Shown in pieces: positions 4,017 through 61,940 of a stretch of 64,000 nucleotides of DNA. The stretch lies in assembly GCA_002269645.1 (NCBI GenBank), contig NIVC01002751.1, positions 1 through 64,000 of the forward strand, read 5' to 3'. The stretch is from Macrostomum lignano (lineage: Eukaryota). Under the pieces are notes generated by a model, which did not search any database, was not told the DNA's origin, and saw nothing but the letters and a program-made list of their open reading frames with translations. The stretch's first letter is position 1; each line of letters begins with the position of its first letter. The position numbers and the translations under genes are program-made.

Positions 4017-5036
4017 CAAGATAGCATTGCTACAAAAATATACTACGACAACCAAGAAATAGAAGAAGTAAATGAATTTAAATACCTGGGAATTATTTTT
4101 GAACCAAAAAACAGCTTTAAAAAATGTATTGAACACCAAACTAAGCAGGGATATACAGCCATGTTTTCCCTACTCCATAGGGTAAAGAATACGTCCCTAG
4201 ACATCACACTCATTCGCAGACTATTTGACGCGCTTGTTACCCCCGTTATCACTTACGGTTGTGAGCTCTGGGGCCCTCTGGCTACCATGTCTGATACAAA
4301 AGCTATTGATAATATTCAGCTGAAATTCTACAAATATCTCCTCAATCTACCAAAATTTGCTAGCAACAGTGTGATATCATCAGAACTTGAGCTTACTCCA
4401 ATCTCTCAACGAATCGCTAAAACCTACCTCATCTACTGGCTGAAGATTAGACACAAAAAACTCTGCCAAACGACTCTAGAAATTTTTTACTCAAGCACTG
4501 GCCAAAAAAATCCATGGAAAATGAATGTACTAAAGAAACTAGAAAGTATAGACCTAAAAGCACTAACTGAAGATAAACTTTCCCAAAGCTTTAATAACGA
4601 GAAATACCTAGTGAAAAAGCACCTCAAGATACACAGAGAAAGAGAACTTAGCCAAAAGCTAGAGAATCTGCAACATATTAAACTCTACAAAAACGCCTAT
4701 CTCTACAAAAAAATCTGCAGGCCCGACCTTTCAGATTACTTTCCATGTACATTTAGAAACAAAAAATTCTTAACAACCCTTCTAAAACTGAAATGCGAGA
4801 TTACACCCAACTTTTTTTCTCAAGAACCATGTAAAATGTGTGGAGCGCGAAATGGTTCTGACATTCTACACTACTTGACCGAATGTCCACAAACTGAAGA
4901 GATCAGAAAAAAATACTTCTGTCAATACCTCTTAAATAGCAATCAAATACACAAGATAGGATATGCTACAAATGAAAAAAGAGTCAGAAAAGAACTCACT
5001 GGTGTAGCTAAAATATATGAAGTCATGAATAGCTAA
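4017..5036 (+). mobile_element. 5'-truncated non-LTR retrotransposon (LINE): RT C-terminus/thumb plus C-terminal Cys/His motif
   Basis: Frame is open from 4017: QEIEEVNEFKYLGIIF...LFDALVTPVITYGCELWG...IQLKFYKYLL, typical of the end of a LINE RT, then CKMCG...ILHYLTECP. (TAC)n at ~5646-5678 may be the 3' tail. Clade not determined. Confidence 0.85.
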
Positions 5037-6686: not shown

Positions 6687-9048
6687 CAGTGGCGCGTCCA
6701 AGGTGGGGCTAGGGGGGCCTGGGCCCCCCCAATTAAGCCACGGGCCCCCCCTGTGGCCCCCCCAATTAAGCCACGGGCCCCCCTGTGGCCCACCCCCACT
6801 TTCAGTTTTTTTCACTTTGGATTTTCCAAAAAATAGTTTGAAAAACCCTTTTTTTCTTTTTTGCAATATTAATTTTAGAAACAATAGTTTTTATACAAAC
6901 ACTTGTAAGCTGTTGAAACCTGTGGATCTTGAACCCGTGGAATTCCAATCTCGGGAATTATTTTCGCACATATTCTAGAATTTGAAGTCATACTCAAACA
7001 AAAACTTGTTAATAGTTAGGATGGAGATGAACATAAAATGGAGTAAATTCATGTAAAATTAAGATTTGAGGCAAGCATTGATCTCGTTGGCTAGGATGCT
7101 GTGCAGAATATCATCAGGCAATGTCGATCTAAAACATGTATTGGAAAATTCAAGAAAACTCTGACCTCTGCCTCTGCCTCTCTCTACATGTACATCCCTC
7201 GGATCCTTTGAAACTTCTATCTTTGCTTCTGTTTCTTCTCTTTTCTCTCATCTTTCGTCTCTCCTGTCATCTCTTCTTTCCTCTTTCCTCTCTTCTCTCT
7301 CCCCTCTTCTTTTGTCTTTTCCCCCACCTCTCTTCTCTCACGTCTTTTCTCTCATCCCTCCTTTTTCTTATTTTATCTCTGCTCTCTTATCTCTTCGCAT
7401 TTCTATTTTTTTGCCTCTCTCTTCTCTCATCGCATCTCTTCCCTGTTCTTTCCTCTCTCCTCACTTTTTTCTCTCTGCTCTCCTCTCTCCTCTTTCCCCT
7501 CTACTCTCGTCTCTTCCCTTTCCTCTCTTTTCTCTCCTCTCTTCTCTTCTCTCTCATCTCTCTCATCTCATATCTTCTCTCTTATTTCCTCTCTCCTCTC
7601 TCCTCTTATTTATCTCTCTGCTCTCCGTTGCCCATCTCTCTTCTCTCTACTTTCTCCCCTCTCCATTCTCTTCTTTCCTCTCCCCTCTCTCCCAGCTGTT
7701 GTCGATTCTCTCCCCTCTTCTCTCTTTACTCCACTTCTTTCTCCCTTTGTATCTCTTCTCTGCTCTTACACATTTTTCTTCTCCCTACTCTCTTCTCTCA
7801 TCTTCATAATCTCTTCTCTGTCCTCTGTTCTCTCTACTCTCCCATCTCTTGTCTGTTTACTCTCGTCTCTGTTCTCTCTTCTGTCAACTTTAATCTCTTA
7901 TATGTTCTGTCATGTCTTTTCCCTGTACTCTTTTATTTCCCGTCTTTGACTCCTCTCTTTCCTTTCTCCTCTCTTCTCTTCTCTTGTCTCTTCTCTTCTC
8001 TCTTTACTCTCCTCTCTCTTCTCTTTCATATCTCATATCTCATTTCTTATTTCTCCTGTCATCTCTACCACCTTATCTCTTTTCTCCTAACTTTACTCTT
8101 TCTCGTCTCTCTTTGCTCTCTCTTTGCTTGCTCTCTTATCTCTTCTCATTTCTCTCTGCTCTCCACTGTTTCCTCTCTCCCCTCTTCTCACTTCTCACTC
8201 TCCTATCTCTCAAAACTTCCCTCTTCTTCTCTCTCTCCTCTCTTCTTTCTACTTCTCTGCTCTCATTTCTCATCTCTCCTATCTATCTCCTCTCTCCCTG
8301 ATCTCTAATCTGTACTATCCTTTTTAACATCTCTTCTCTCTTCTCTCTGCTTGCTTATCCCCACCCTTTCTAATCTCTCCTTTCTCCACTCTCATCTTTC
8401 TACTCTCTCCTATATACTCTCTCCTCTCTCATCTCTACTCTCTTCTATCTGCTCTCTATACTTTCTCCCATCTTTTCTCTCTTCTCTCATCTCTACTCTC
8501 TTCTATCTCCTCTCTTTATCCTTTATCCTATCTACTTCATCCTATCTACTCTCTCCTCTCTCATCTCATCTCTCTCATTTCTCCCTCTTCTCACCTCTAC
8601 TCTCTCCTCCTATTTATCTCTCCCTACTCTCTCCCCTTCTTCTCTGCCCTCTCCTCTCAGTAAAAATATATACTTTGCAGAGATTAGCCAATAATTAAAT
8701 GAACCAACAGAGTTTTTTGATAATAATCTGCCAGGAAAAGTAAACTGTAAAGTTAAATGTATTTGTGTTTAGCTTTCTATTCAAAAATTTTCAAATTGCA
8801 AATCCTAAAAAGTGTTCTTGGGCAAAAACATTTAGAATGTCTAAATGTAAATAAGAGAGAATATAAATCAACTTAGCTATAGCATTCATTCTTTGTGAGA
8901 TCTTTTTTGGATGTCATTTTTACTTTTCGGTAAAAATTTGCTTTTACAATAATTAAAAAACTCAATTCAAGATGTTGGTATTGCCCCTTCAGTTTTTACT
9001 GGGCCCTAACTGGGCCCCCCCATCCTGAAAACTCTGGACGCGCCCCTG
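6687..9048. mobile_element. Non-autonomous hAT-type element (MITE-like, 2.36 kb) with a CT-rich interior
   Basis: TIRs CAGTGGCGCGTCCA and TGGACGCGCCCCTG. Perfect 8-bp TSD AACGCTGC at 6679-6686 and 9049-9056. Subterminal GGGCCCCC motifs. Confidence 0.9.
7170..8660. repeat. Polypyrimidine (CT-rich) low-complexity tract
   Basis: Almost exclusively C/T on the + strand; source of the spurious Leu/Ser/Phe ORFs. Confidence 0.9.
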
Positions 9049-9993: not shown

Positions 9994-10059
9994 TAGGGTT
10001 AGGGTTAGGGTTAGGGTTAGGGTTAGGGTTAGGGTTAGGGTTAGGGTTAGGGTTAGGGT
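9994..10059 (+). repeat. Interstitial telomeric repeat (TTAGGG)10-11
   Basis: Perfect TTAGGG units from 9999 to 10058, preceded by TAGGG. Confidence 0.95.
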
Positions 10060-21507: not shown

Positions 21508-24293
<2,786 letters not shown>

Positions 24294-25104: not shown

Positions 25105-26780
25105 ACCATGTTATTGCAAACAACTCACCAGTGATTCTAGCGACTCTTGTAACTTTTCAACCACTCGAACGACTGCAATGCAACGGAGAGGCGACTCTTG
25201 AGTCACGAGCTCATCACGTGAGTTGCAGAATCGTGAAAAGAGTCGCGAAAAGTCGTCCAAGAGTCATTGTGCTTGCGCTTTAGTTGCAACTCGGTGATTC
25301 TGCAGTGACTCTACGGCCCCAGAGTCATTATACGAGGGGTGTCCCAAGGGTCGGTGCACTTTCTTCACTGCAGCCTTTTCTGACCGATCAGAAATATTTA
25401 TTTTGTATCAGTTAACAGGAGAATTATCTGCCCGTTAAAATGACTTTCTGTTTGTTTCTGTATCTGCTGGCATTCTTGAGATGTGAGCATTTTTATGCCC
25501 CACCCCCTGTGCTACTTTTACAAATTGCCATAGACCAAAGCTTTGTACCTGATGCACGAAACAACGAAATATTCAACGAATCAATAAAACATCGGCAACA
25601 TGAAAGCTGAGGAAAGAACAGTTGAAGGTTAATCATTAACATTGTCCTGAGGATTCTCCACATAGTCACCACTGCGCTGCACACTTCTGCCATCGGCAAT
25701 GGCATCAGCAAGGGCATCAGCAATGGCATCGACAAATTCAGGAATGGCTTGACACCGATGCCAGACTGACAGTTCGTGAGATTGATCAGACTGACATGCT
25801 CGGCAGTCCAAAGTTCACTGTTCCATACCGCACGATGACTGCAGAGTTGGAACTGTCAAAGATCTCGGCCCGCTGGGTACCGCGGCTCCGCACCTTCTGC
25901 GCCATGACAACCCACAATCCACGTCCCACACGGCCAAGAAAACGGAGGAGACGATCAAGCAGGCAAGTTTTGAGCTGCTCTGACACCCACGCCTTCTCTC
26001 TGGATTTGTCACCAGCTGACTTTTCCATCTTTCCAAAGATAAAGAAGCTGCTGCATGGACGAATCTTTGCTTGTTGTGGGAGCCTGGAAGCATTGACTCG
26101 CTAAGTTCTCCTTCATGAGATGCCGCGCTCAGATTTTGCTGATGCCATTGACGACATGCACAGCCGATGGCAGAAGTGTGCAGCGCAGTGGTCACTGTGT
26201 GGAGAGTCCTCAGGACAGTGTTAATGATTAACTTTTAACTGTTCTTTCCTCAGCTTTCATGTTGCCGATGTTTTATTGATTCGTTGAATATTTCGTTGTT
26301 TCGTGCATCAGGTGCAAAGCTTTGGTCTATGGCAATTTGTAAAAGTAGCACAGGGGGTGGGGCATAAAAATGCTCATATCTCAAGAATGCCAGCAGATAC
26401 AGAAATAAACAGAAAGTTATTTTAACGGGCAGATAATTCTCTTGTTAACTGATACAAAATAAATATTTCTGATCGGTCAGAGGGGGCTGTGGTGGGGAGG
26501 GTGCACCGACTTTTGGGACACCCCTCGTAGAAGCGCCCCCAGAGTGACTTGCGCTGCCCGAGTGTCGTTTCAGAGTCGCAGGCAGTAAAACGCCTCAAAT
26601 TTGACTCTCAGGCGACTCTGACCACTTTTTTGGCGACTTTTAACGTGACATCTCGTTGCTTTAGACTAGAGTCGTTCGTCTAGAGTCACTTCTTTCATAT
26701 TTCACCTTTATTACCTGTACCGACTCTAAAGTGACTTTGGGGCCACCCAAGTTGACTCTATGACGCTTCTTGGCCTTGGT
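25105..26780. mobile_element. Possible non-autonomous DNA element rich in GAGTC/GACTC motifs, host of the mariner at 25333
   Basis: About 14 GAGTC/GACTC motifs are split evenly across both flanks of the mariner. Both ends begin TACCA in inverted orientation. No convincing TIR or TSD beyond that. Confidence 0.35.
25333..26527 (+). mobile_element. Internally deleted mariner derivative with ~380-bp inverted arms
   Basis: TA-flanked CGAGGGGTGTCCCAA termini. Left arm 25333-25711 is the reverse complement of 26136-26527. The middle encodes DARLTVREI...SKISARWVPRL, AFSLDLSPADFSIFPKIKKLLHG and SRWQKCAAQ. Confidence 0.9.
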
Positions 26781-27141
26781 AACGTTTTCAAGCGGCTAAT
26801 ATCCTAAAAAAATATTCTTTCCATGCAACACTAAGCCGTTTAATACCTTCTATCTCTGCTTGGATTGTTTTGCTATCATGTCTTGTTTTTTTTATCTACT
26901 ATGCAATGCTATTGAGAGTATCGGTGTTTAGTCATATGACATCAAATACAATTATTTTTCTGTTAAATACTTATCACAACTAATGGCGATGGCATTAGGT
27001 ATTAGGTACAGACACAAAGCTATTAAACTGTTAGTTTGTCTTATTTTAAAAACTTTTTTGAAACCATCTACTAAGATGAACGAATTTACCAGAATGCAGT
27101 ACAGTGCAGAACACTAGATATCTAGATATATGGACTACTAA

Positions 27142-27956
27142 TCTATCTCCTATACGGTACATATAAAAACGAAAACTGTGTATGTGTGTGTACTAAGCTT
27201 GTTACGGACTCGCAAACCGCTCAACCAAATGACACCAAATTTTGCACTCACCATAAACTCACTACCGAGAATGAGAGAGGAGAGAGCAGAGACGAGACGA
27301 GAGAAAAAGAGAAGAAGCGAGAGAGGAAAGAGAATTTTTAAGCCAAGGCCCAAGGGACGTAGAGAGAACAGAGGCCGGAGTTTTCCCACGCATGCGTTAA
27401 GAGTTCAGATACCTGGTTGGTTACCATTTTTACCTCTATCCAACTATTGACAATTTTTTGTTAGAATTTGATTTCAGAATTAAGAATGTCAGGAAAAATA
27501 GTTCTGGGGATTGGAATTCCACGAGTTCAAAATCCGCGGTTTCAACAGCTTGTAGTAAGTACATAAACGTAACCTTATTGGCATTTAGCTGCGAGTTCAT
27601 GCTCTCTCCTATGGCCAAGCGCTCGTCCGGCTGAATTAACTGAATTTCCAAGAAAAAAACAGCTCCGAGAGACAAGAGGGAATGTACATTGCAAACCAGC
27701 CCCCCACCCCCCCGCGGAGTGAGGAGTGCTATGCTATCTACGAGCGTACTTTATTTTTCGTTCCCCTATCTCGCCGATTATTTCCTGGAAATTTCAACCA
27801 GTGAAGTGCGCTTAATGACGGATAGGGCTACGCTACATTCAAGCATACGAGAGTGCAGCTCAGAGAGAAATAAAGATCACGTGATTTCCATCAACCCAGG
27901 GCTTAACTTAGCGGCAACGCGATGCACTCGGTCAGTGGTTGGTCGGGGCCCGCTAG
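27142..27956 (+). mobile_element. Helitron-like non-autonomous segment
   Basis: Begins A|TC TATC...ATATAAAAACGAAAACTGTGTATGTGTGTG...CGCTCAACCAAATGACACCAAATTTTGCAC, resembling common Helitron 5' ends. Candidate 3' end is a GC-rich tract then CTAG at 27953-27956, followed by A rather than T, so the 3' boundary is uncertain. Confidence 0.45.
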
Positions 27957-28168
27957 ATTGTTAAAAATAAGCGGAGGGAGAGGTTAGCACAGCGGATACC
28001 GCTCGCCGCAACTAAATTTCCAAGAAATCTTAGGATTTTTTGGAAACCGAAAAAAATTACGGACAGTAGACCCTCGCACAGCGTACTTGTTCATTATTGT
28101 GTGTTGCGGTGGCGCTTTCTTGGAAATTCCAAGCTCAACTTCCCACCGCCTGAAAGTGTATATATATA
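27646..28168 (+). promoter_or_regulatory. Putative viperin promoter: 4 GAS-type palindromes, ISRE-like, kappaB-like and TATA-like elements
   Basis: TTCCAAGAA 27646, TTCCTGGAA 27782, TTCCAAGAA 28018, TTCTTGGAA 28117; GAAACCGAAA 28043; TGGAAATTCC 28121; TATATATA ~28158. Confidence 0.6.
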
Positions 28169-28277
28169 CACAGAGGCTGGACGCGACGGATGGTCACCAC
28201 CATAGCAGCTTTCGTGTTTGTTGAAATCTCTGATGTAAATATCCATTGATCAGTTTGATAGAAAAAAATATCTAGAC

Positions 28278-30470
28278 ATGCCAATAGTTTTGTTTAACAA
28301 TATCGAGGGCAGCTTGCCATCGAGTTTGATTACGCTGGTTAAAATCGCTCTGACTCATCTGGGTCACCTGGGTCAGCTGGCTCTTGCCAATGTACGCGGA
28401 TTTATATTCAGGCGTACATTGGACGCTGGCAGAGATACAAACGATGAAGCTGAGAAGCCACGAGCCGCCGGCGCCGCCCCGCCAGAGTCTGTGGTGCCGG
28501 TGAGCGTCAACTATCACTTCACCAGGCGTTGCAATTATAAGTGTGGCTTCTGCTTTCACACGGCAATTAGTTCGTTTGTACTGCCGCTGGAGGAAGCTAA
28601 GCGAGGCCTGCGGATGCTGCAGGAGGCTGGTAAGGCTGGTTCGATTGTTGGTCCATGGTATTTTACTTTACTTTGCACTTTGCAGACGGTGAGCTCCATT
28701 TTAAGCACCGGGCTACGGGCGCCCATTGAAGCACCTGTAGGGCTGGGAGCAGCGCCGCCCATTGAAGCACCTGTGGGACTGGGAGCAGCGCCGCCCATTG
28801 AAGCACCTGTGGGACTGGGAGCAGCGGCGCCCATTAAACAGCCAAGGCGCCCGTGCGTAGACCAACGCTGTCAGTAGTATAGTGAAAGTATGAAACTCTG
28901 TAACCACCCGCAGGCATGCAAAAGGTGAACTTCTCAGGCGGCGAGCCGTTCCTCGAACAGCGGGGTCGCCTGCTTGGCGAGATGGTCCGCTTCTGCAAGG
29001 AGACTCTCGGCCTGCCAAGCGTCAGCATCGTCAGCAACGGCAGCCTCATCACCGAGGAATGGTTCCAGACCTATGGTGAGTGAGCTGCTCTGCCCCCGAT
29101 GAAAACTGTGACAGACACTAAGACTTGCAGACAGACGCTAGGTCAGATACTGAGACAGACGCTAGGTCAGATACTGAGACAGACGCTAGGTCAGATACTG
29201 AGACAGACGCTAGGTCAGATACTGAGACAGACGCTAGGTCAGATACTGAGACAGACGCTAGGTCAGATACTGAGACAGACGCTAGGTCAGATACTGAGAC
29301 AGACGCTAGGTCAGATACTGAGACAGACGCTAGGTCAGATACTGAGACAGACGCTAGGTCAGATACTGAGACAGACGCTAGGTCAGATACTGAGACAGAC
29401 GATAAGACAGATACTGAGACAGACGATAAGACAGATACTGAGACAGACGCTGCTAAGACAGATACTGAGACAGACGCTGCTAAGACAAATACTGAGACAG
29501 ACGCTGCTAAGACAAATACTGAGACAGACGCTGCTAAGACAAATACTGAGACAGACGCTGCTAAGACAGATACTGAGACAGACGCTAAGACAGAGTTGCA
29601 ACAATACCCAACCGTACCAAAACTCTCCAGGCGAGTGGCTGGACATCCTAGCCGTGTCCTGCGACAGCTTCGACGAGGCCACCAACCGGGCCATCGGACG
29701 CCACGCGCCCCGGAGCCACCACCTTGATAAGCTTTACCAGATCAGCGAATGGTGCGCTCGCTACCGGGTGGCCTTCAAAATCAACACCGTTGTCAACACG
29801 CACAACTGGCAGGAGGACATGGCTGATCAAATCCTGGATCTCAACCCGTGCCGCTGGAAAGTCTTCCAGTGCCTCCTAATCGGCGGCGAGAACTGCGGCG
29901 AGGACAGCCTGCGCCACGCCGAGACTTTTGTGGTCACCGATGAACAGTTTCGCAGCTTCCTTGACAGGCACAGCCGCGTGGAGTGCCTGGTGCCGGAGAG
30001 TAACGAGAAAATGCGCGACAGCTACCTCATACTGGATGAGCGGGTGCGCTACTGCTTCTAGAGGGGTCCTTGCAATGGGGTTTGCTAGCTGATGACGTCA
30101 TTGACAATTTGGTGACGTCACCGGTGAAGACGTAATTTGTAATCAACAACGTCATTCGCTATTTATTGCATCATATTATACTTCTTGATGACATAATCTT
30201 GGATTTATTACGTCATTTTCTATCATTAGATGATATTCAGAACCATATGTTGAAATCGTTGAATATCTCGACGATCTAGAACGGGTTAGTCAACCAACAA
30301 TCCCACAGATGCGCTTCCTCGACTGCACCCGCGGCCGCAAGGAGCCCTCGCGCAGTATCCTGGATGTTGGGGTCGCCAACGCCATCTGTTCCAGCGGCTT
30401 CGACGAGGCGATGTTTCGCAGGCGAGGCGGAGTATACCAGTGGAGCAAGAACGACATCATGGAGTGGTAA
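28278..30470 (+). CDS. RSAD2: Viperin (radical SAM antiviral ddhNTP synthase), 4 exons, 362 aa
   Basis: Exons 28278-28629, 28914-29075, 29631-30043, 30309-30470; all GT-AG and phase-consistent (1089 nt). Motifs [88 protein letters not shown]|[25 protein letters not shown]. Confidence 0.97.
28719..28835. repeat. 39-bp repeat x3 in viperin intron 1
   Basis: Unit GCCCATTGAAGCACCTGTGGGACTGGGAGCAGCGCC plus 3 nt. Confidence 0.85.
29128..29592. repeat. 24-bp minisatellite (27-bp variant) in viperin intron 2
   Basis: Unit GACAGACGCTAGGTCAGATACTGA. Confidence 0.95.
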
Positions 30471-30955
30471 CGCCTGCCTAGCCAGTCAGCTGATGACTAC
30501 TGACTACTGACGTCATCAAAATCTATGGGACCTCCTTTTTTAAATACTATTCAATCTGTTTCTATTTACACATTATTTAAGTAAATTTATAATTTTTATC
30601 TATGCTAATCTACCATACAAAAAAATCTATGCTATAATCATGGCAGCCCCCGCTTTGTTTAGAACTCCTTTTTTAATCTGTTTTGCAAATTTTCATGACA
30701 TTTTTGAACTACGAGTTATGTAGCCAGTTTTGACCACATCTGTACATAAATTTCTCGTTTAGTTCCTCATACTTATGGAAACCGTGACCTATTGTATCCA
30801 TCGTTTGTTATAGTTCCCAATTATATAATACAGTCAGTTTGCTTTTGTTTAAACATGCGTATCCAGAAATTGCACCAATATATGGTGTACTATTTTGCAC
30901 GTTATGTGACTTTTTATTGGACTGATTTTGACTCGACCTTTTCCCTTGTATATTC

Positions 30956-31430
30956 ATCTTTCTCTTGTCTGTCTCCGTCTTTCTCTCGTCTGTCTCCGTC
31001 TTTCCCTTGCCTGTCTCCGTCTTTCTCTTGCCTGTCTCCGTCTTTCTCTTGCCTGTCTCCGTCTTTCTCTTGCCTGTCTCCGTCTTTCTCTTGCCTGTCT
31101 CCGTCTTTCTCTTGCCTGTCTCCGTCTTTCTCTTGCCTGTCTCCGTCTTTCCCTTGCCTGTCTCCGTCTTTCTCTTGTCTGTCTCCGTCTTTCTCTTGCC
31201 TGTCTCCGTCTTTCTCTTGCCTGTCTCCGTCTTTCTCTTGCCTGTCTCCGTCTTTCTCTTGCCTGTCTCCGTCTTTCTCTTGCCTGTCTCCGTCTTTCTC
31301 TTGCCTGTCTCCGTCTTTCTCTTGCCTGTCTCCGTCTTTCTCTTGCCTGTCTCCGTCTTTCTCTTGCCTGTCTCCGTCTTTCTCTTGCCTGTCTCCGTCT
31401 TTCTCTTGCCTGTCTCCGTCTTTTTCTTGT
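30956..31430. repeat. 21-bp minisatellite
   Basis: Unit CTGTCTCCGTCTTTCTCTTGC. Confidence 0.95.

Positions 31431-33140: not shown

Positions 33141-61940
<28,800 letters not shown>

What the first reader, a model, noticed from the sequence alone, without database searches (positions are those of the whole stretch)
27645..28168. Cluster of four STAT/GAS palindromes plus ISRE-like and kappaB-like sites upstream of an invertebrate viperin
Seen: TTTCCAAGAAA (27645), TTTCCTGGAAA (27781), TTTCCAAGAAA (28017) and TTTCTTGGAAA (28116), all fitting TTTCYWRGAAA, within 480 bp and not part of a tandem array. GAAACCGAAA lies at 28043-28052, TGGAAATTCC overlaps the last GAS (28121-28130; 9/10 to the GGGAAATTCC kappaB site), and a TATA-like run is at ~28158, ~120 nt before the ATG. 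Established: TTC-N3-GAA binds STATs, GAAANNGAAA binds IRFs, and vertebrate viperin is an interferon-stimulated gene. Inference: an ISG-like, JAK/STAT-inducible antiviral module in an animal lacking interferons. The two distal sites lie in the Helitron-like segment and may be TE-derived.
Basis: partly seen in the sequence, partly recalled or inferred. Interest (0 to 1): 0.82.

Follow-up and report, generated by a model that had tools for sequence, protein, structure and literature searches.

The report
STAT-site cluster upstream of flatworm viperin
Four near-identical STAT-type binding palindromes sit just upstream of the antiviral gene viperin in the flatworm Macrostomum lignano, which suggests, without proving, that this interferon-less animal switches the gene on through STAT signalling.

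Summary
The window is Macrostomum lignano contig NIVC01002751.1. A complete four-exon viperin/RSAD2 gene starts at 28278. TTTCCAAGAAA occurs three times (27645 +, 28017 +, 28116 -) and TTTCCTGGAAA once (27781), within 482 bp ending about 40 bp before a TATA run. None lies in a tandem array.

A cluster like this is rare by chance: P about 0.005 for TTCNNNGAA, at most 0.001 for TTCYNRGAA, and 0 of 3000 simulations for TTTCNNNGAAA. The ISRE-like and kappaB-like sites are present but are single matches, no better than chance.

All three syntenic copies in this polyploid genome keep every site. They differ by only 1-2.5%, so this says nothing about constraint. Only 27434-27551 is demonstrably a dispersed repeat, and it ends 93 bp before the first site.

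Independent support comes from planarians. Three of seven validated dsRNA-response genes (stat5, mx1, dicer1-2) carry TTCTAAGAA within the first 50 nt of their transcripts; none of 17 other genes does. M. lignano transcripts carry STAT5A, IRF1 and RELA best-human-hit labels.

Best reading: a STAT-responsive, inducible viperin promoter. This is a prediction with no expression or binding data, and it is a new member of a known kind.

The parts
27645..27655 (+). GAS 1: TTTCCAAGAAA, extended GAATTTCCAAGAAA from 27642. TTC starts 632 nt before the ATG.
27781..27791 (.). GAS 2: TTTCCTGGAAA inside the 13-bp palindrome ATTTCCTGGAAAT (27780-27792). TTC starts 496 nt before the ATG.
28017..28027 (+). 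GAS 3: TTTCCAAGAAA. Its 18-bp context AACTAAATTTCCAAGAAA matches that of GAS 1 at 17/18. TTC starts 260 nt before the ATG.
28043..28052 (+). ISRE/IRF-like core GAAACCGAAA, 15 bp after GAS 3. A single match, not above chance.
28116..28126 (-). GAS 4: TTTCTTGGAAA, the reverse complement of TTTCCAAGAAA. TTC starts 161 nt before the ATG, about 40 bp before the TATA run.
28119..28133 (.). 15-bp palindrome CTTGGAAATTCCAAG. It contains the kappaB-like TGGAAATTCC (28121-28130) and a second, incomplete GAS half (TTCCAAGCT at 28128).
28158..28169 (+). TATA-like run GTATATATATAC, 109-120 nt before the ATG. Presumed core promoter; the TSS was not determined.
28278..28629 (+). Viperin/RSAD2 exon 1, from the ATG, including the CNYKCGFC radical-SAM motif
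28914..29075 (+). Viperin exon 2
29631..30043 (+). Viperin exon 3
30309..30470 (+). Viperin exon 4 with stop codon. The spliced product of 362 aa is 100% identical to BOX15_Mlig028573g1.
27434..27551 (+). Fragment of a dispersed repeat, 80% identical to 6907-7026 on the minus strand. It ends 93 bp before GAS 1.
27267..27340 (+). GA-rich simple sequence, where the blastn alignments to copy L001 break

Best explanation
The roughly 650 bp before the ATG at 28278 is the proximal promoter of the M. lignano viperin (RSAD2) gene. It has a TATA box at 28158-28169.

Upstream of the TATA box are four high-quality STAT-type palindromes. Three are TTTCCAAGAAA and one is TTTCCTGGAAA. All fit TTCYNRGAA, which from my own knowledge is the STAT5 / Drosophila STAT92E type of GAS. 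They are irregularly spaced, and the repeated 11-mer occurs in both orientations.

The most likely mechanism is that a tyrosine-phosphorylated dimer of the flatworm STAT5-like protein binds these sites. That would make transcription of the antiviral enzyme inducible, as part of a dsRNA/virus or cytokine-like response. A homotypic cluster would give cooperative, switch-like induction.

Shown here: the sites, their non-randomness, their position relative to a viperin gene, and their presence in all three genomic copies.

Inferred: promoter function, STAT binding, inducibility and the upstream signal. The single IRF-like core next to GAS 3 may contribute, but nothing supports it beyond the match itself.
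For: 1. Sites and coordinates are verified.

2. Clustering is beyond Markov-model expectation: P = 0.005-0.0065 for TTCNNNGAA, 0-0.001 for TTCYNRGAA, 0/3000 for TTTCNNNGAAA. No comparable strict cluster occurs in 87 kb of other invertebrate viperin loci.

3. The sites are not in a tandem array. They are not products of a segmental duplication longer than 18 bp. Both halves TTTC and GAAA are kept in all four, as expected for a dimeric palindromic binder.

4. The gene is a true viperin. It scores 544 bits against TIGR04278 (cut-off 450) and E = 1.6e-137 to mouse viperin 5VSL. It has introns and conserved synteny (NDUFB6-DPM1-viperin) in three copies.

5. Flatworm STAT exists and belongs to an antiviral-type response. 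Planarian stat5 and mx1 rise with RIG-I-like receptors on adar knockdown (PMC8797187). M. lignano transcripts are labelled STAT5A, MX1 and MX2 by best human hit (PMC5946080 supplement).

6. New cross-check. In that paper's S6 table, the 9-mer TTCTAAGAA starts at nt 24, 32 and 39 of the mx1, stat5 and dicer1-2 transcripts. That is 3 of 7 validated dsRNA-response genes against 0 of 17 other genes. Fisher P = 0.017; binomial P = 1.7e-4 for the GAS class.

7. Precedent exists. STAT, IRF and NF-kappaB motifs were found in a search of known TF binding sites among Nematostella poly(I:C)-induced genes, and viperin is among those genes (PMC8476169). Oyster viperin depends on an IFN-like cytokine whose receptor activates GAS reporters (PMC8218723).
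Against: - There are no expression, binding or chromatin data for this gene in any source I could reach.
- I could not retrieve an M. lignano STAT sequence. Its presence rests on a best-human-hit label in a supplementary GO table. The same table also lists TLR4, although a review states that Platyhelminthes have no TLR orthologues, so such labels are not orthology.
- JAK status is unknown.
- The three genomic copies differ by only 1-2.5%. Retention of all sites is therefore expected by chance: P of no hit is 0.45 for the 44 bp of GAS.
- A homotypic GAS cluster is not a shared feature of other invertebrate viperin promoters. Oyster, sea star, lancelet and scallop have 0-2 sites in 1.5 kb.
- Sites 1, 3 and 4 share 14-18 bp of context. 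This could be extended specificity, or it could be small-scale copying.
- The same window holds 45 TTCTAAGAA copies in two minisatellites, so GAS-like palindromes can multiply in this genome without any evident function.
- The TSS is not mapped.
Confidence: 0.5

Rival explanations
1. The palindromes have no regulatory function. They arose by small-scale copying of a 14-18 bp unit, or were carried in by a transposable element. They happen to resemble GAS elements.
For: - Sites 1 and 3 share 17/18 bp, and sites 1 and 4 share 14/14 bp in inverted orientation.
- A dispersed-repeat fragment (27434-27551) lies 93 bp upstream of site 1. Both it and its other copy are followed by a GC hairpin plus CTAG, which resembles a Helitron 3' end.
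- A 1.2-kb element with 32-bp inverted ends inserted at 25326-26533 in this copy only, so the intergenic region is TE-active.
- GAS-like cores are amplified 45 times in two minisatellites of the same window.
- Real genomes produce loose GAS clusters more often than Markov models predict.
Against: - No part of 27560-28160 recurs elsewhere in the 64-kb window.
- Beyond the 118-bp fragment the two repeat copies show no significant similarity: score 22 against a shuffled mean of 17.4, SD 2.1, maximum 26.
- Spacing is irregular and the repeated 11-mer occurs in both orientations.
- Two of the four sites lie outside the putative element, next to the TATA box.
- The strict motif cluster was seen in no more than 1 of 1000 simulations per model, and not at all in 87 kb of control loci.
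- The planarian result shows the motif class tracks dsRNA-response genes in another flatworm.
Confidence: 0.2
2. The sites are functional but bound by a factor other than STAT. Candidates are a Rel-homology protein (NF-kappaB/NFAT type) using the (T/A)GGAAA halves, a zinc-finger repressor with BCL6-like specificity, or a flatworm-specific factor. They would then set tissue-specific or stress expression rather than a STAT-dependent antiviral response.
For: - Every site contains (T/A)GGAAA on one strand. Site 4 forms GGAAATTCC, which fits the loose Rel consensus HGGARNYYCC.
- A RELA best-human-hit label exists for an M. lignano transcript.
- TRANSFAC-type scans of viperin promoters routinely return BCL6 alongside STAT for the same sequence (PMC6414715).
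Against: - All four sites keep both halves at exactly 3-bp spacing (TTTC-N3-GAAA). A monomeric GGAAA reader would not require this.
- Only one of the four has a kappaB-like flank, and the strict GGGRNWYYCC consensus is absent.
- BCL6 is a vertebrate factor (my own knowledge).
- No HSF-type spacing (GAAnnTTC) is present.
Confidence: 0.2
3. Viperin here is driven mainly as in vertebrates, by IRF binding to the ISRE-like GAAACCGAAA and by NF-kappaB at TGGAAATTCC. The GAS palindromes would be secondary.
For: - Both sequences exist within 240 nt of the ATG.
- IRF1 and RELA best-human-hit labels exist for M. lignano transcripts.
- The scallop viperin upstream region has AAACCGAAAG near one GAS, and the oyster region has AAACAGAAAG near one GAS.
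- Vertebrate viperin is ISRE-driven (PMC6414715).
Against: - The ISRE core is one of 7 in the window and lacks the extended GAAANNGAAACT form. The kappaB-like site fails GGGRNWYYCC. Single matches of this kind are expected by chance in a 1.3-kb region.
- The kappaB-like sequence is explained by the flank shared among the GAS sites.
Confidence: 0.1

Closest known systems
Vertebrate viperin (RSAD2) promoters, including fish promoters with predicted GAS plus ISRE (Atlantic cod, crucian carp; PMC6414715)
   Same: Same downstream gene: about 70% amino-acid identity to vertebrate viperins over about 80-85% of the protein. STAT- and IRF-type elements lie in the proximal promoter, with a TATA-proximal arrangement.
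   Different: Vertebrate induction is interferon-dependent and dominated by ISRE bound by ISGF3/IRFs. Here there is no interferon. There is one weak ISRE-like core and a homotypic cluster of four STAT5-type GAS sites. The CMPK2-viperin gene pairing, seen in the lancelet locus, is absent; the neighbours are DPM1 and an ankyrin-repeat gene.
Oyster interferon-like system (CgIFNLP / CgIFNR-3 / JAK-STAT controlling CgViperin, CgMx; PMC8218723, PMC5869526)
   Same: A lophotrochozoan without a canonical interferon in which viperin behaves as an induced antiviral gene, with STAT signalling proposed as the route.
   Different: The oyster evidence is functional: RNAi, a haemolymph factor and heterologous reporters. 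No GAS cluster is evident in the C. virginica viperin 5' flank, which has one TTCAAAGAA at -180. The flatworm evidence is purely cis-sequence.
Nematostella vectensis poly(I:C) response (PMC8476169)
   Same: Among genes induced by a viral mimic in an interferon-less animal, which include viperin, a search of known TF binding sites found STAT, IRF and NF-kappaB motifs.
   Different: That is a genome-wide motif search over induced genes, backed by expression data. Here there is a single locus with an unusually dense, nearly identical set of sites and no expression data.
Planarian dsRNA response downstream of PRLR1 (stat5, mx1, dicer1-2, ago, RLRs; PMC8797187)
   Same: Same phylum. A STAT5-like gene is itself induced. 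The same class of palindrome (TTCTAAGAA, fitting TTCYNRGAA) lies at the 5' ends of three response genes.
   Different: No viperin is mentioned in the planarian paper. The planarian motif sits inside the assembled 5' UTR as a single copy. The M. lignano sites are TTCCAAGAA/TTCCTGGAA, four copies, upstream of a TATA box.
Drosophila STAT92E target promoters and multimerised-GAS reporters (my own knowledge, not checked here)
   Same: Clusters of TTCNNNGAA with TTTC...GAAA extension, read by a single STAT5-like STAT; used for inducible, partly antiviral, genes.
   Different: Different phylum and target genes. Insects have no viperin. The Drosophila pathway components (Upd/Dome/Hop) are not established in flatworms.

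Membership tests
Viperin / RSAD2 (the gene served by the element) | Whole-protein match to the curated viperin model above its cut-off | tested here: met
   TIGR04278 scores 544.5 bits against a cut-off of 450.
Viperin / RSAD2 (the gene served by the element) | Radical-SAM CxxxCxxC motif and viperin-specific C-terminal domain aligned to a solved viperin | tested here: met
   CNYKCGFC is present. Residues 69-359 align to mouse viperin 5VSL at E = 1.6e-137. Pfam Radical_SAM also hits.
Viperin / RSAD2 (the gene served by the element) | Antiviral activity / ddhCTP synthesis | not testable with these tools
   Needs enzymology or infection assays.
GAS element (STAT dimer binding site) | Palindrome TTC-N3-GAA | tested here: met
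   All four sites fit. All also fit the narrower TTCYNRGAA and TTTCNNNGAAA.
GAS element (STAT dimer binding site) | Occurrence beyond chance in a promoter-proximal position | tested here: met
   P = 0.005-0.0065 or lower in simulations. The sites lie 161-632 nt before the ATG, and the nearest is about 40 bp before the TATA run.
GAS element (STAT dimer binding site) | A STAT protein encoded by the same organism | tested here: inconclusive
   Indirect only. A STAT5A best-human-hit label exists for an M. lignano transcript, and planarians have stat5. An attempt to fetch a flatworm STAT protein found nothing.
GAS element (STAT dimer binding site) | Evolutionary conservation of the sites above neutral expectation | tested here: inconclusive
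   All sites are kept in the three M. lignano copies, but divergence is 1-2.5%, so P of no hit by chance is 0.45. No genomic sequence of another Macrostomum species was reachable.
GAS element (STAT dimer binding site) | Physical STAT binding and STAT-dependent induction | not testable with these tools
   Needs EMSA/DAP-seq, RNAi and reporter assays.
ISRE / IRF element | Extended consensus GAAANNGAAAC(T) | tested here: not met
   GAAACCGAAAAA matches only the 10-nt core. GAAANNGAAAC occurs once in the window, elsewhere.
ISRE / IRF element | Occurrence beyond chance | tested here: not met
   It is one of 7 core matches in 64 kb.
NF-kappaB site | Consensus GGGRNWYYCC | tested here: not met
   TGGAAATTCC has T at position 1. 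No strict match lies in 27000-28300. It does fit the looser HGGARNYYCC.
Helitron (claimed source of the two distal sites) | 3' end CTRR preceded by a GC hairpin and followed by host T; multiple genomic copies; Rep/helicase or clear family consensus | tested here: inconclusive
   GGGGCCCGCTAG at about 27944-27955 is followed by A, not T. Only 27434-27551 recurs in the window. The ORF in the segment has no Pfam hit. The whole genome could not be searched.
Interferon-stimulated gene (strict sense) | Induction by an interferon through ISGF3 or GAF | not testable with these tools
   Interferons are not known outside jawed vertebrates (established knowledge). At most this is an ISG-like arrangement.

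The most novel reading that the evidence does not exclude
Flatworms run an interferon-independent antiviral regulon centred on a single STAT5-like factor that reads TTCYNRGAA palindromes. In M. lignano it would drive viperin through a four-site promoter cluster. In planarians it would drive stat5 itself, mx1 and dicer1-2 through a TTCTAAGAA element at the transcript start. If so, the STAT-to-antiviral-effector link predates interferons and goes back at least to the spiralian, and probably the bilaterian, ancestor. M. lignano is described as amenable to transgenesis (PMC5173321 abstract), so the link would be directly testable there.
Probability: 0.3. Interest if true: 0.75.

Novelty: new member of a known kind. 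Interest (0 to 1): 0.52.

Why it matters
How animals without interferon switch on interferon-stimulated-gene homologues such as viperin is an open question. Functional data exist mainly for oysters, insects and a sea anemone. No cis-regulatory evidence was found for flatworms in the papers searched.

A dense, nearly invariant GAS cluster on a viperin promoter gives a concrete and falsifiable handle. M. lignano is reported to be amenable to transgenesis, and RNAi is an established method in planarians (PMC8797187). A wild-type versus mutated-site reporter, combined with STAT knockdown, could therefore settle the question.

The planarian side result should be checked genome-wide. The same palindrome class marks stat5, mx1 and dicer1-2, which hints that the logic is shared across the phylum.

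If the sites prove non-functional, the case becomes a caution about reading vertebrate motifs into a repeat-rich genome.

Tried and rejected
1. Footprinting with paralogues. I fetched the two other syntenic copies, L001 and L008. All motifs are kept, but divergence is too low (1-2.5%) to mean anything.

2. Orthologue from another Macrostomum species. Only an intronless 1.2-kb transcript contig was available (L003, 87% amino-acid identity), with no promoter and a 5' UTR that shows no GAS and no evident resemblance on inspection.

3. Direct retrieval of a flatworm STAT. The 115-aa N-terminal fragment of planarian stat5, taken from a paper supplement, found no protein. A generic STAT query was not tried, because only the best 120 hits are listed and they would all be close relatives of the query.

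4. A random M. lignano background via TE-encoded proteins. The LINE-like ORF at 4017-5033 returned one non-Macrostomum hit. Genome-wide motif frequency and repeat status therefore remain untested.

5. Shared GAS cluster in other invertebrate viperin promoters. Not found in oyster, sea star, lancelet or scallop, apart from one proximal site each in three of them.

6. tRNA/SINE and Rfam checks of 26.4-28.4 kb: nothing.

7. MITE reading of the 14-bp inverted match between sites 1 and 4: rejected on reading the flanks, because there is no target-site duplication and site 3 is an internal direct copy.

8. HSF reading: rejected, because there is no GAAnnTTC spacing.

9. Literature. There is no paper on Macrostomum viperin or its gene ID. 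The M. lignano microbiome paper's supplement has no viperin or STAT entry, and the germline/neoblast paper's supplement has none either.
Full report
**Where the window comes from**

Splicing four exons (28278-28629, 28914-29075, 29631-30043, 30309-30470) gives a 362-aa protein. It is 100% identical to the Macrostomum lignano protein BOX15_Mlig028573g1. The encoding contig is NIVC01002751.1, and window coordinates equal record coordinates. M. lignano is a free-living marine flatworm and a hidden polyploid (abstract of PMC10468722).

The protein is a true viperin. It scores 544.5 bits against TIGR04278 (cut-off 450). Residues 69-359 align to mouse viperin 5VSL at E = 1.6e-137. The CNYKCGFC radical-SAM motif is present. 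The upstream neighbours are NDUFB6 and a DPM1-type glycosyltransferase. Downstream is a long gene that probably includes an ankyrin-repeat exon at 51462-51749.

**The observation**

One point makes the pattern tighter than described. TTTCTTGGAAA at 28116 is the reverse complement of TTTCCAAGAAA. Three of the four sites are therefore the same 11-mer, two on the plus strand and one on the minus strand. The fourth, TTTCCTGGAAA, lies inside the 13-bp palindrome ATTTCCTGGAAAT.

Flanks are also similar. GAATTTCCAAGAAA occurs at sites 1 and 4, and AACTRAATTTCCAAGAAA at sites 1 and 3. No similarity extends beyond 18 bp, spacings are 136, 236 and 99 bp, and no tandem array covers the interval.

**Chance**

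I masked 24.2 kb of tandem arrays and simulated the remaining 39.8 kb with first- and third-order Markov models.

| Motif | P of at least 4 matches in some 500-bp window |
|---|---|
| TTCNNNGAA (textbook GAS) | 0.005-0.0065 |
| TTCYNRGAA (STAT5 type) | 0-0.001 |
| TTTCNNNGAAA | 0 of 3000 |

Real DNA is less well behaved. In 87 kb from four other invertebrate viperin loci, two clusters of four loose GAS matches occur, but none of the strict form. In this window the only other clusters are two minisatellites. The GAS cluster is therefore more than chance.

The other two motifs are not. GAAANNGAAA occurs 7 times in the window, and the copy at 28043 lacks the extended ISRE form. TGGAAATTCC fails GGGRNWYYCC. 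The kappaB-like sequence is most simply the flank of GAS 4, since the other sites have TGAATTTCC, TAAATTTCC and GAAATTTCC in the same position.

**Repeat or promoter?**

A self-comparison shows that 27434-27551 has a second copy at 6907-7026 on the minus strand (80% identity), along with the GA-rich run at 27267-27333. Nothing in 27560-28160 recurs.

Both copies are followed, at different distances, by a GC-rich hairpin and CTAG. Beyond the 118-bp fragment the two copies show no significant similarity: local score 22, against a shuffled mean of 17.4, SD 2.1 and maximum 26. The base after CTAG is A, not the T expected of a Helitron insertion. No tRNA-like or Rfam feature is present.

A TE origin of sites 1 and 2 therefore remains possible but unshown. 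I could not search the whole genome.

**Related copies**

Two further syntenic copies exist in the assembly. L001 is on NIVC01001964.1. L008 is on NIVC01000984.1 and encodes BOX15_Mlig012673g1 (361 aa). All three keep the four GAS sites, the ISRE-like core, the palindrome and the TATA run at equivalent positions.

This carries no weight. Divergence in the promoter block is about 1-2% and similar to introns and flanks. Zero changes in 44 bp is expected with P = 0.45. A 1.2-kb element with 32-bp inverted ends at 25326-26533 is present only in the window copy.

**Other invertebrate viperins**

I fetched the loci of Crassostrea virginica, Asterias rubens, Branchiostoma and Pecten maximus. None has a homotypic GAS cluster in the 1.5 kb before the ATG.

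Three of them have one TTCNNNGAA 100-180 nt before the ATG. Two of those, oyster and scallop, have it next to an AAAC(A/C)GAAAG IRF-like half site. This is suggestive but post hoc. The dense cluster is a Macrostomum feature, not a shared one.

**Does the animal have the factor?**

I could not retrieve an M. lignano STAT sequence. Indirect evidence is as follows.

- A supplementary GO table of the M. lignano ageing study lists best-human-hit labels for M. lignano transcripts. These include STAT5A, IRF1, RELA, MX1 and MX2.
- The same table also lists TLR4, although a review states that Platyhelminthes have no TLR orthologues. Such labels are hints, not orthology.
- No JAK label was found among those lists.
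- In the planarian Schmidtea mediterranea, stat5 and mx1 are upregulated together with RIG-I-like receptors, Dicer and Argonaute genes when ADARs are knocked down. The authors raise JAK-STAT signalling as a possibility (PMC8797187).

**An independent cross-check**

The S6 table of that planarian paper prints the first 222-400 nt of 24 transcripts. TTCTAAGAA starts at nt 24 (mx1), 32 (stat5) and 39 (dicer1-2). The upstream sequences are otherwise different, so this is not a spliced leader. None of the 17 genes outside the seven validated dsRNA-response genes has any TTCNNNGAA in its first 60 nt.

| Test | P |
|---|---|
| Fisher one-sided, 3 of 7 against 0 of 17 | 0.017 |
| Binomial against base composition, GAS class | 1.7e-4 |
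| Binomial against base composition, exact 9-mer | 1.5e-8 |

The 60-nt limit was chosen after seeing the data. The paper's main text contains no match to 'promoter', 'binding site' or 'cis-regulatory', and its only uses of 'motif' concern protein domains and RNA-editing sites. In a second flatworm, then, the same class of palindrome marks antiviral-type response genes, including the STAT gene itself.

**Mechanism**

The best-supported reading is a TATA-containing inducible promoter. In it, a STAT5-like dimer binds four TTCYNRGAA palindromes and raises viperin transcription during a dsRNA, viral or cytokine-like response. I put this at about 0.5. The match of TTCYNRGAA to STAT5 and STAT92E preferences is from my own knowledge and was not tested here.

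Rivals:

- Non-functional palindromes spread by small copying or brought in by a TE: 0.2.
- Functional sites read by another factor, such as a Rel/NFAT-type protein using the GGAAA halves: 0.2.
- A vertebrate-like IRF plus NF-kappaB drive, with GAS secondary: 0.1.

**Comparison and novelty**

STAT, IRF and NF-kappaB motifs among genes induced by viral mimics in interferon-less animals have been reported for Nematostella (PMC8476169). An interferon-like cytokine upstream of oyster viperin has also been reported (PMC8218723, PMC5869526). Fish viperin promoters have predicted GAS plus ISRE (PMC6414715).

What is new is the phylum, the unusually dense and uniform GAS cluster with only a weak ISRE, and the agreement with planarian response genes. 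I rate it a new member of a known kind with moderate interest (0.52). Its main value is that it is directly testable in a flatworm reported to be amenable to transgenesis.

Noticed in passing
window 22019-22867 and 51902-52399: Two minisatellites with different units (a 39-mer in about 22 copies, a 21-mer in about 23 copies) share the core TTCTAAGAATCC. That core is a STAT5-type GAS and the same 9-mer found at planarian dsRNA-response transcript starts. They hold 45 of the 65 TTCNNNGAA matches in the window. The first lies in a DPM1 intron 5.4-6.3 kb upstream of the viperin ATG. Whether they are related, or bind anything, is unknown.
   Followed up: partly
Schmidtea mediterranea transcripts dd_Smed_v6_7128_0_1 (stat5), 884_0_10 (mx1), 8502_0_1 (dicer1-2), from PMC8797187 S6 table: TTCTAAGAA starts at nt 32, 24 and 39 of these three dsRNA-response transcripts. 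No such site occurs in the first 60 nt of 17 other genes in the same table. The main text of the paper has no match to 'promoter', 'binding site' or 'cis-regulatory'.
   Followed up: partly
window 25326-26533: A 1.2-kb insertion with 32-bp imperfect inverted ends (25328-25359 and 26501-26532), present in this copy of the locus and absent from L001 and L008. Its ORF looks mariner-like to the eye but has no Pfam hit.
   Followed up: partly
window 27434-27551 and 6907-7026 (minus): A 118-bp dispersed-repeat fragment (80% identity). In both places it has a GA/TC-rich simple tract on one side and a GC hairpin plus CTAG some distance away on the other. It contains GGAATTCCACGRGTTCAARATCC, which resembles a tRNA T-arm, but ARAGORN finds no tRNA.
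   Followed up: partly
window 23056-23066; L001 5753; L008 5831: A fifth, isolated TTTCCAAGAAA in the DPM1 intron, 5.2 kb upstream of viperin, kept in all three copies.
   Followed up: no
window 27877-27884: TCACGTGA palindrome (an E-box with TFEB/MITF-type flanks) between GAS 2 and GAS 3. A single 8-mer of this kind is expected about once per 64 kb.
   Followed up: no
whole window: About 24 of 64 kb is minisatellite or microsatellite arrays in roughly 40 separate blocks, many of them inside introns, including three viperin introns. Also present are (TAGGGT)11, a telomere-like hexamer, at 9994-10059 and (TAGT)154 at 45293-45908.
   Followed up: no
L006 1-4196 (Branchiostoma) versus window 21541-24293: The lancelet viperin has a Thymidylate_kin (CMPK2-like) gene upstream on the opposite strand. 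That is the pairing known from vertebrates (my own knowledge). M. lignano has DPM1 in that position in all three copies.
   Followed up: no
L004, L005, L007, 100-180 nt before the ATG: Oyster, sea star and scallop viperins each have one TTCNNNGAA close to the ATG. In oyster and scallop it is beside an AAAC(A/C)GAAAG IRF-like half site.
   Followed up: partly
window 27307-31427 versus L001: The two copies are 98.4-99.3% identical from the GA-rich tract through the gene and about 1 kb beyond, but 89-96% identical in most adjacent blocks. This could be a gene-conversion tract or uneven haplotype divergence. The third copy, L008, does not show the same step.
   Followed up: partly
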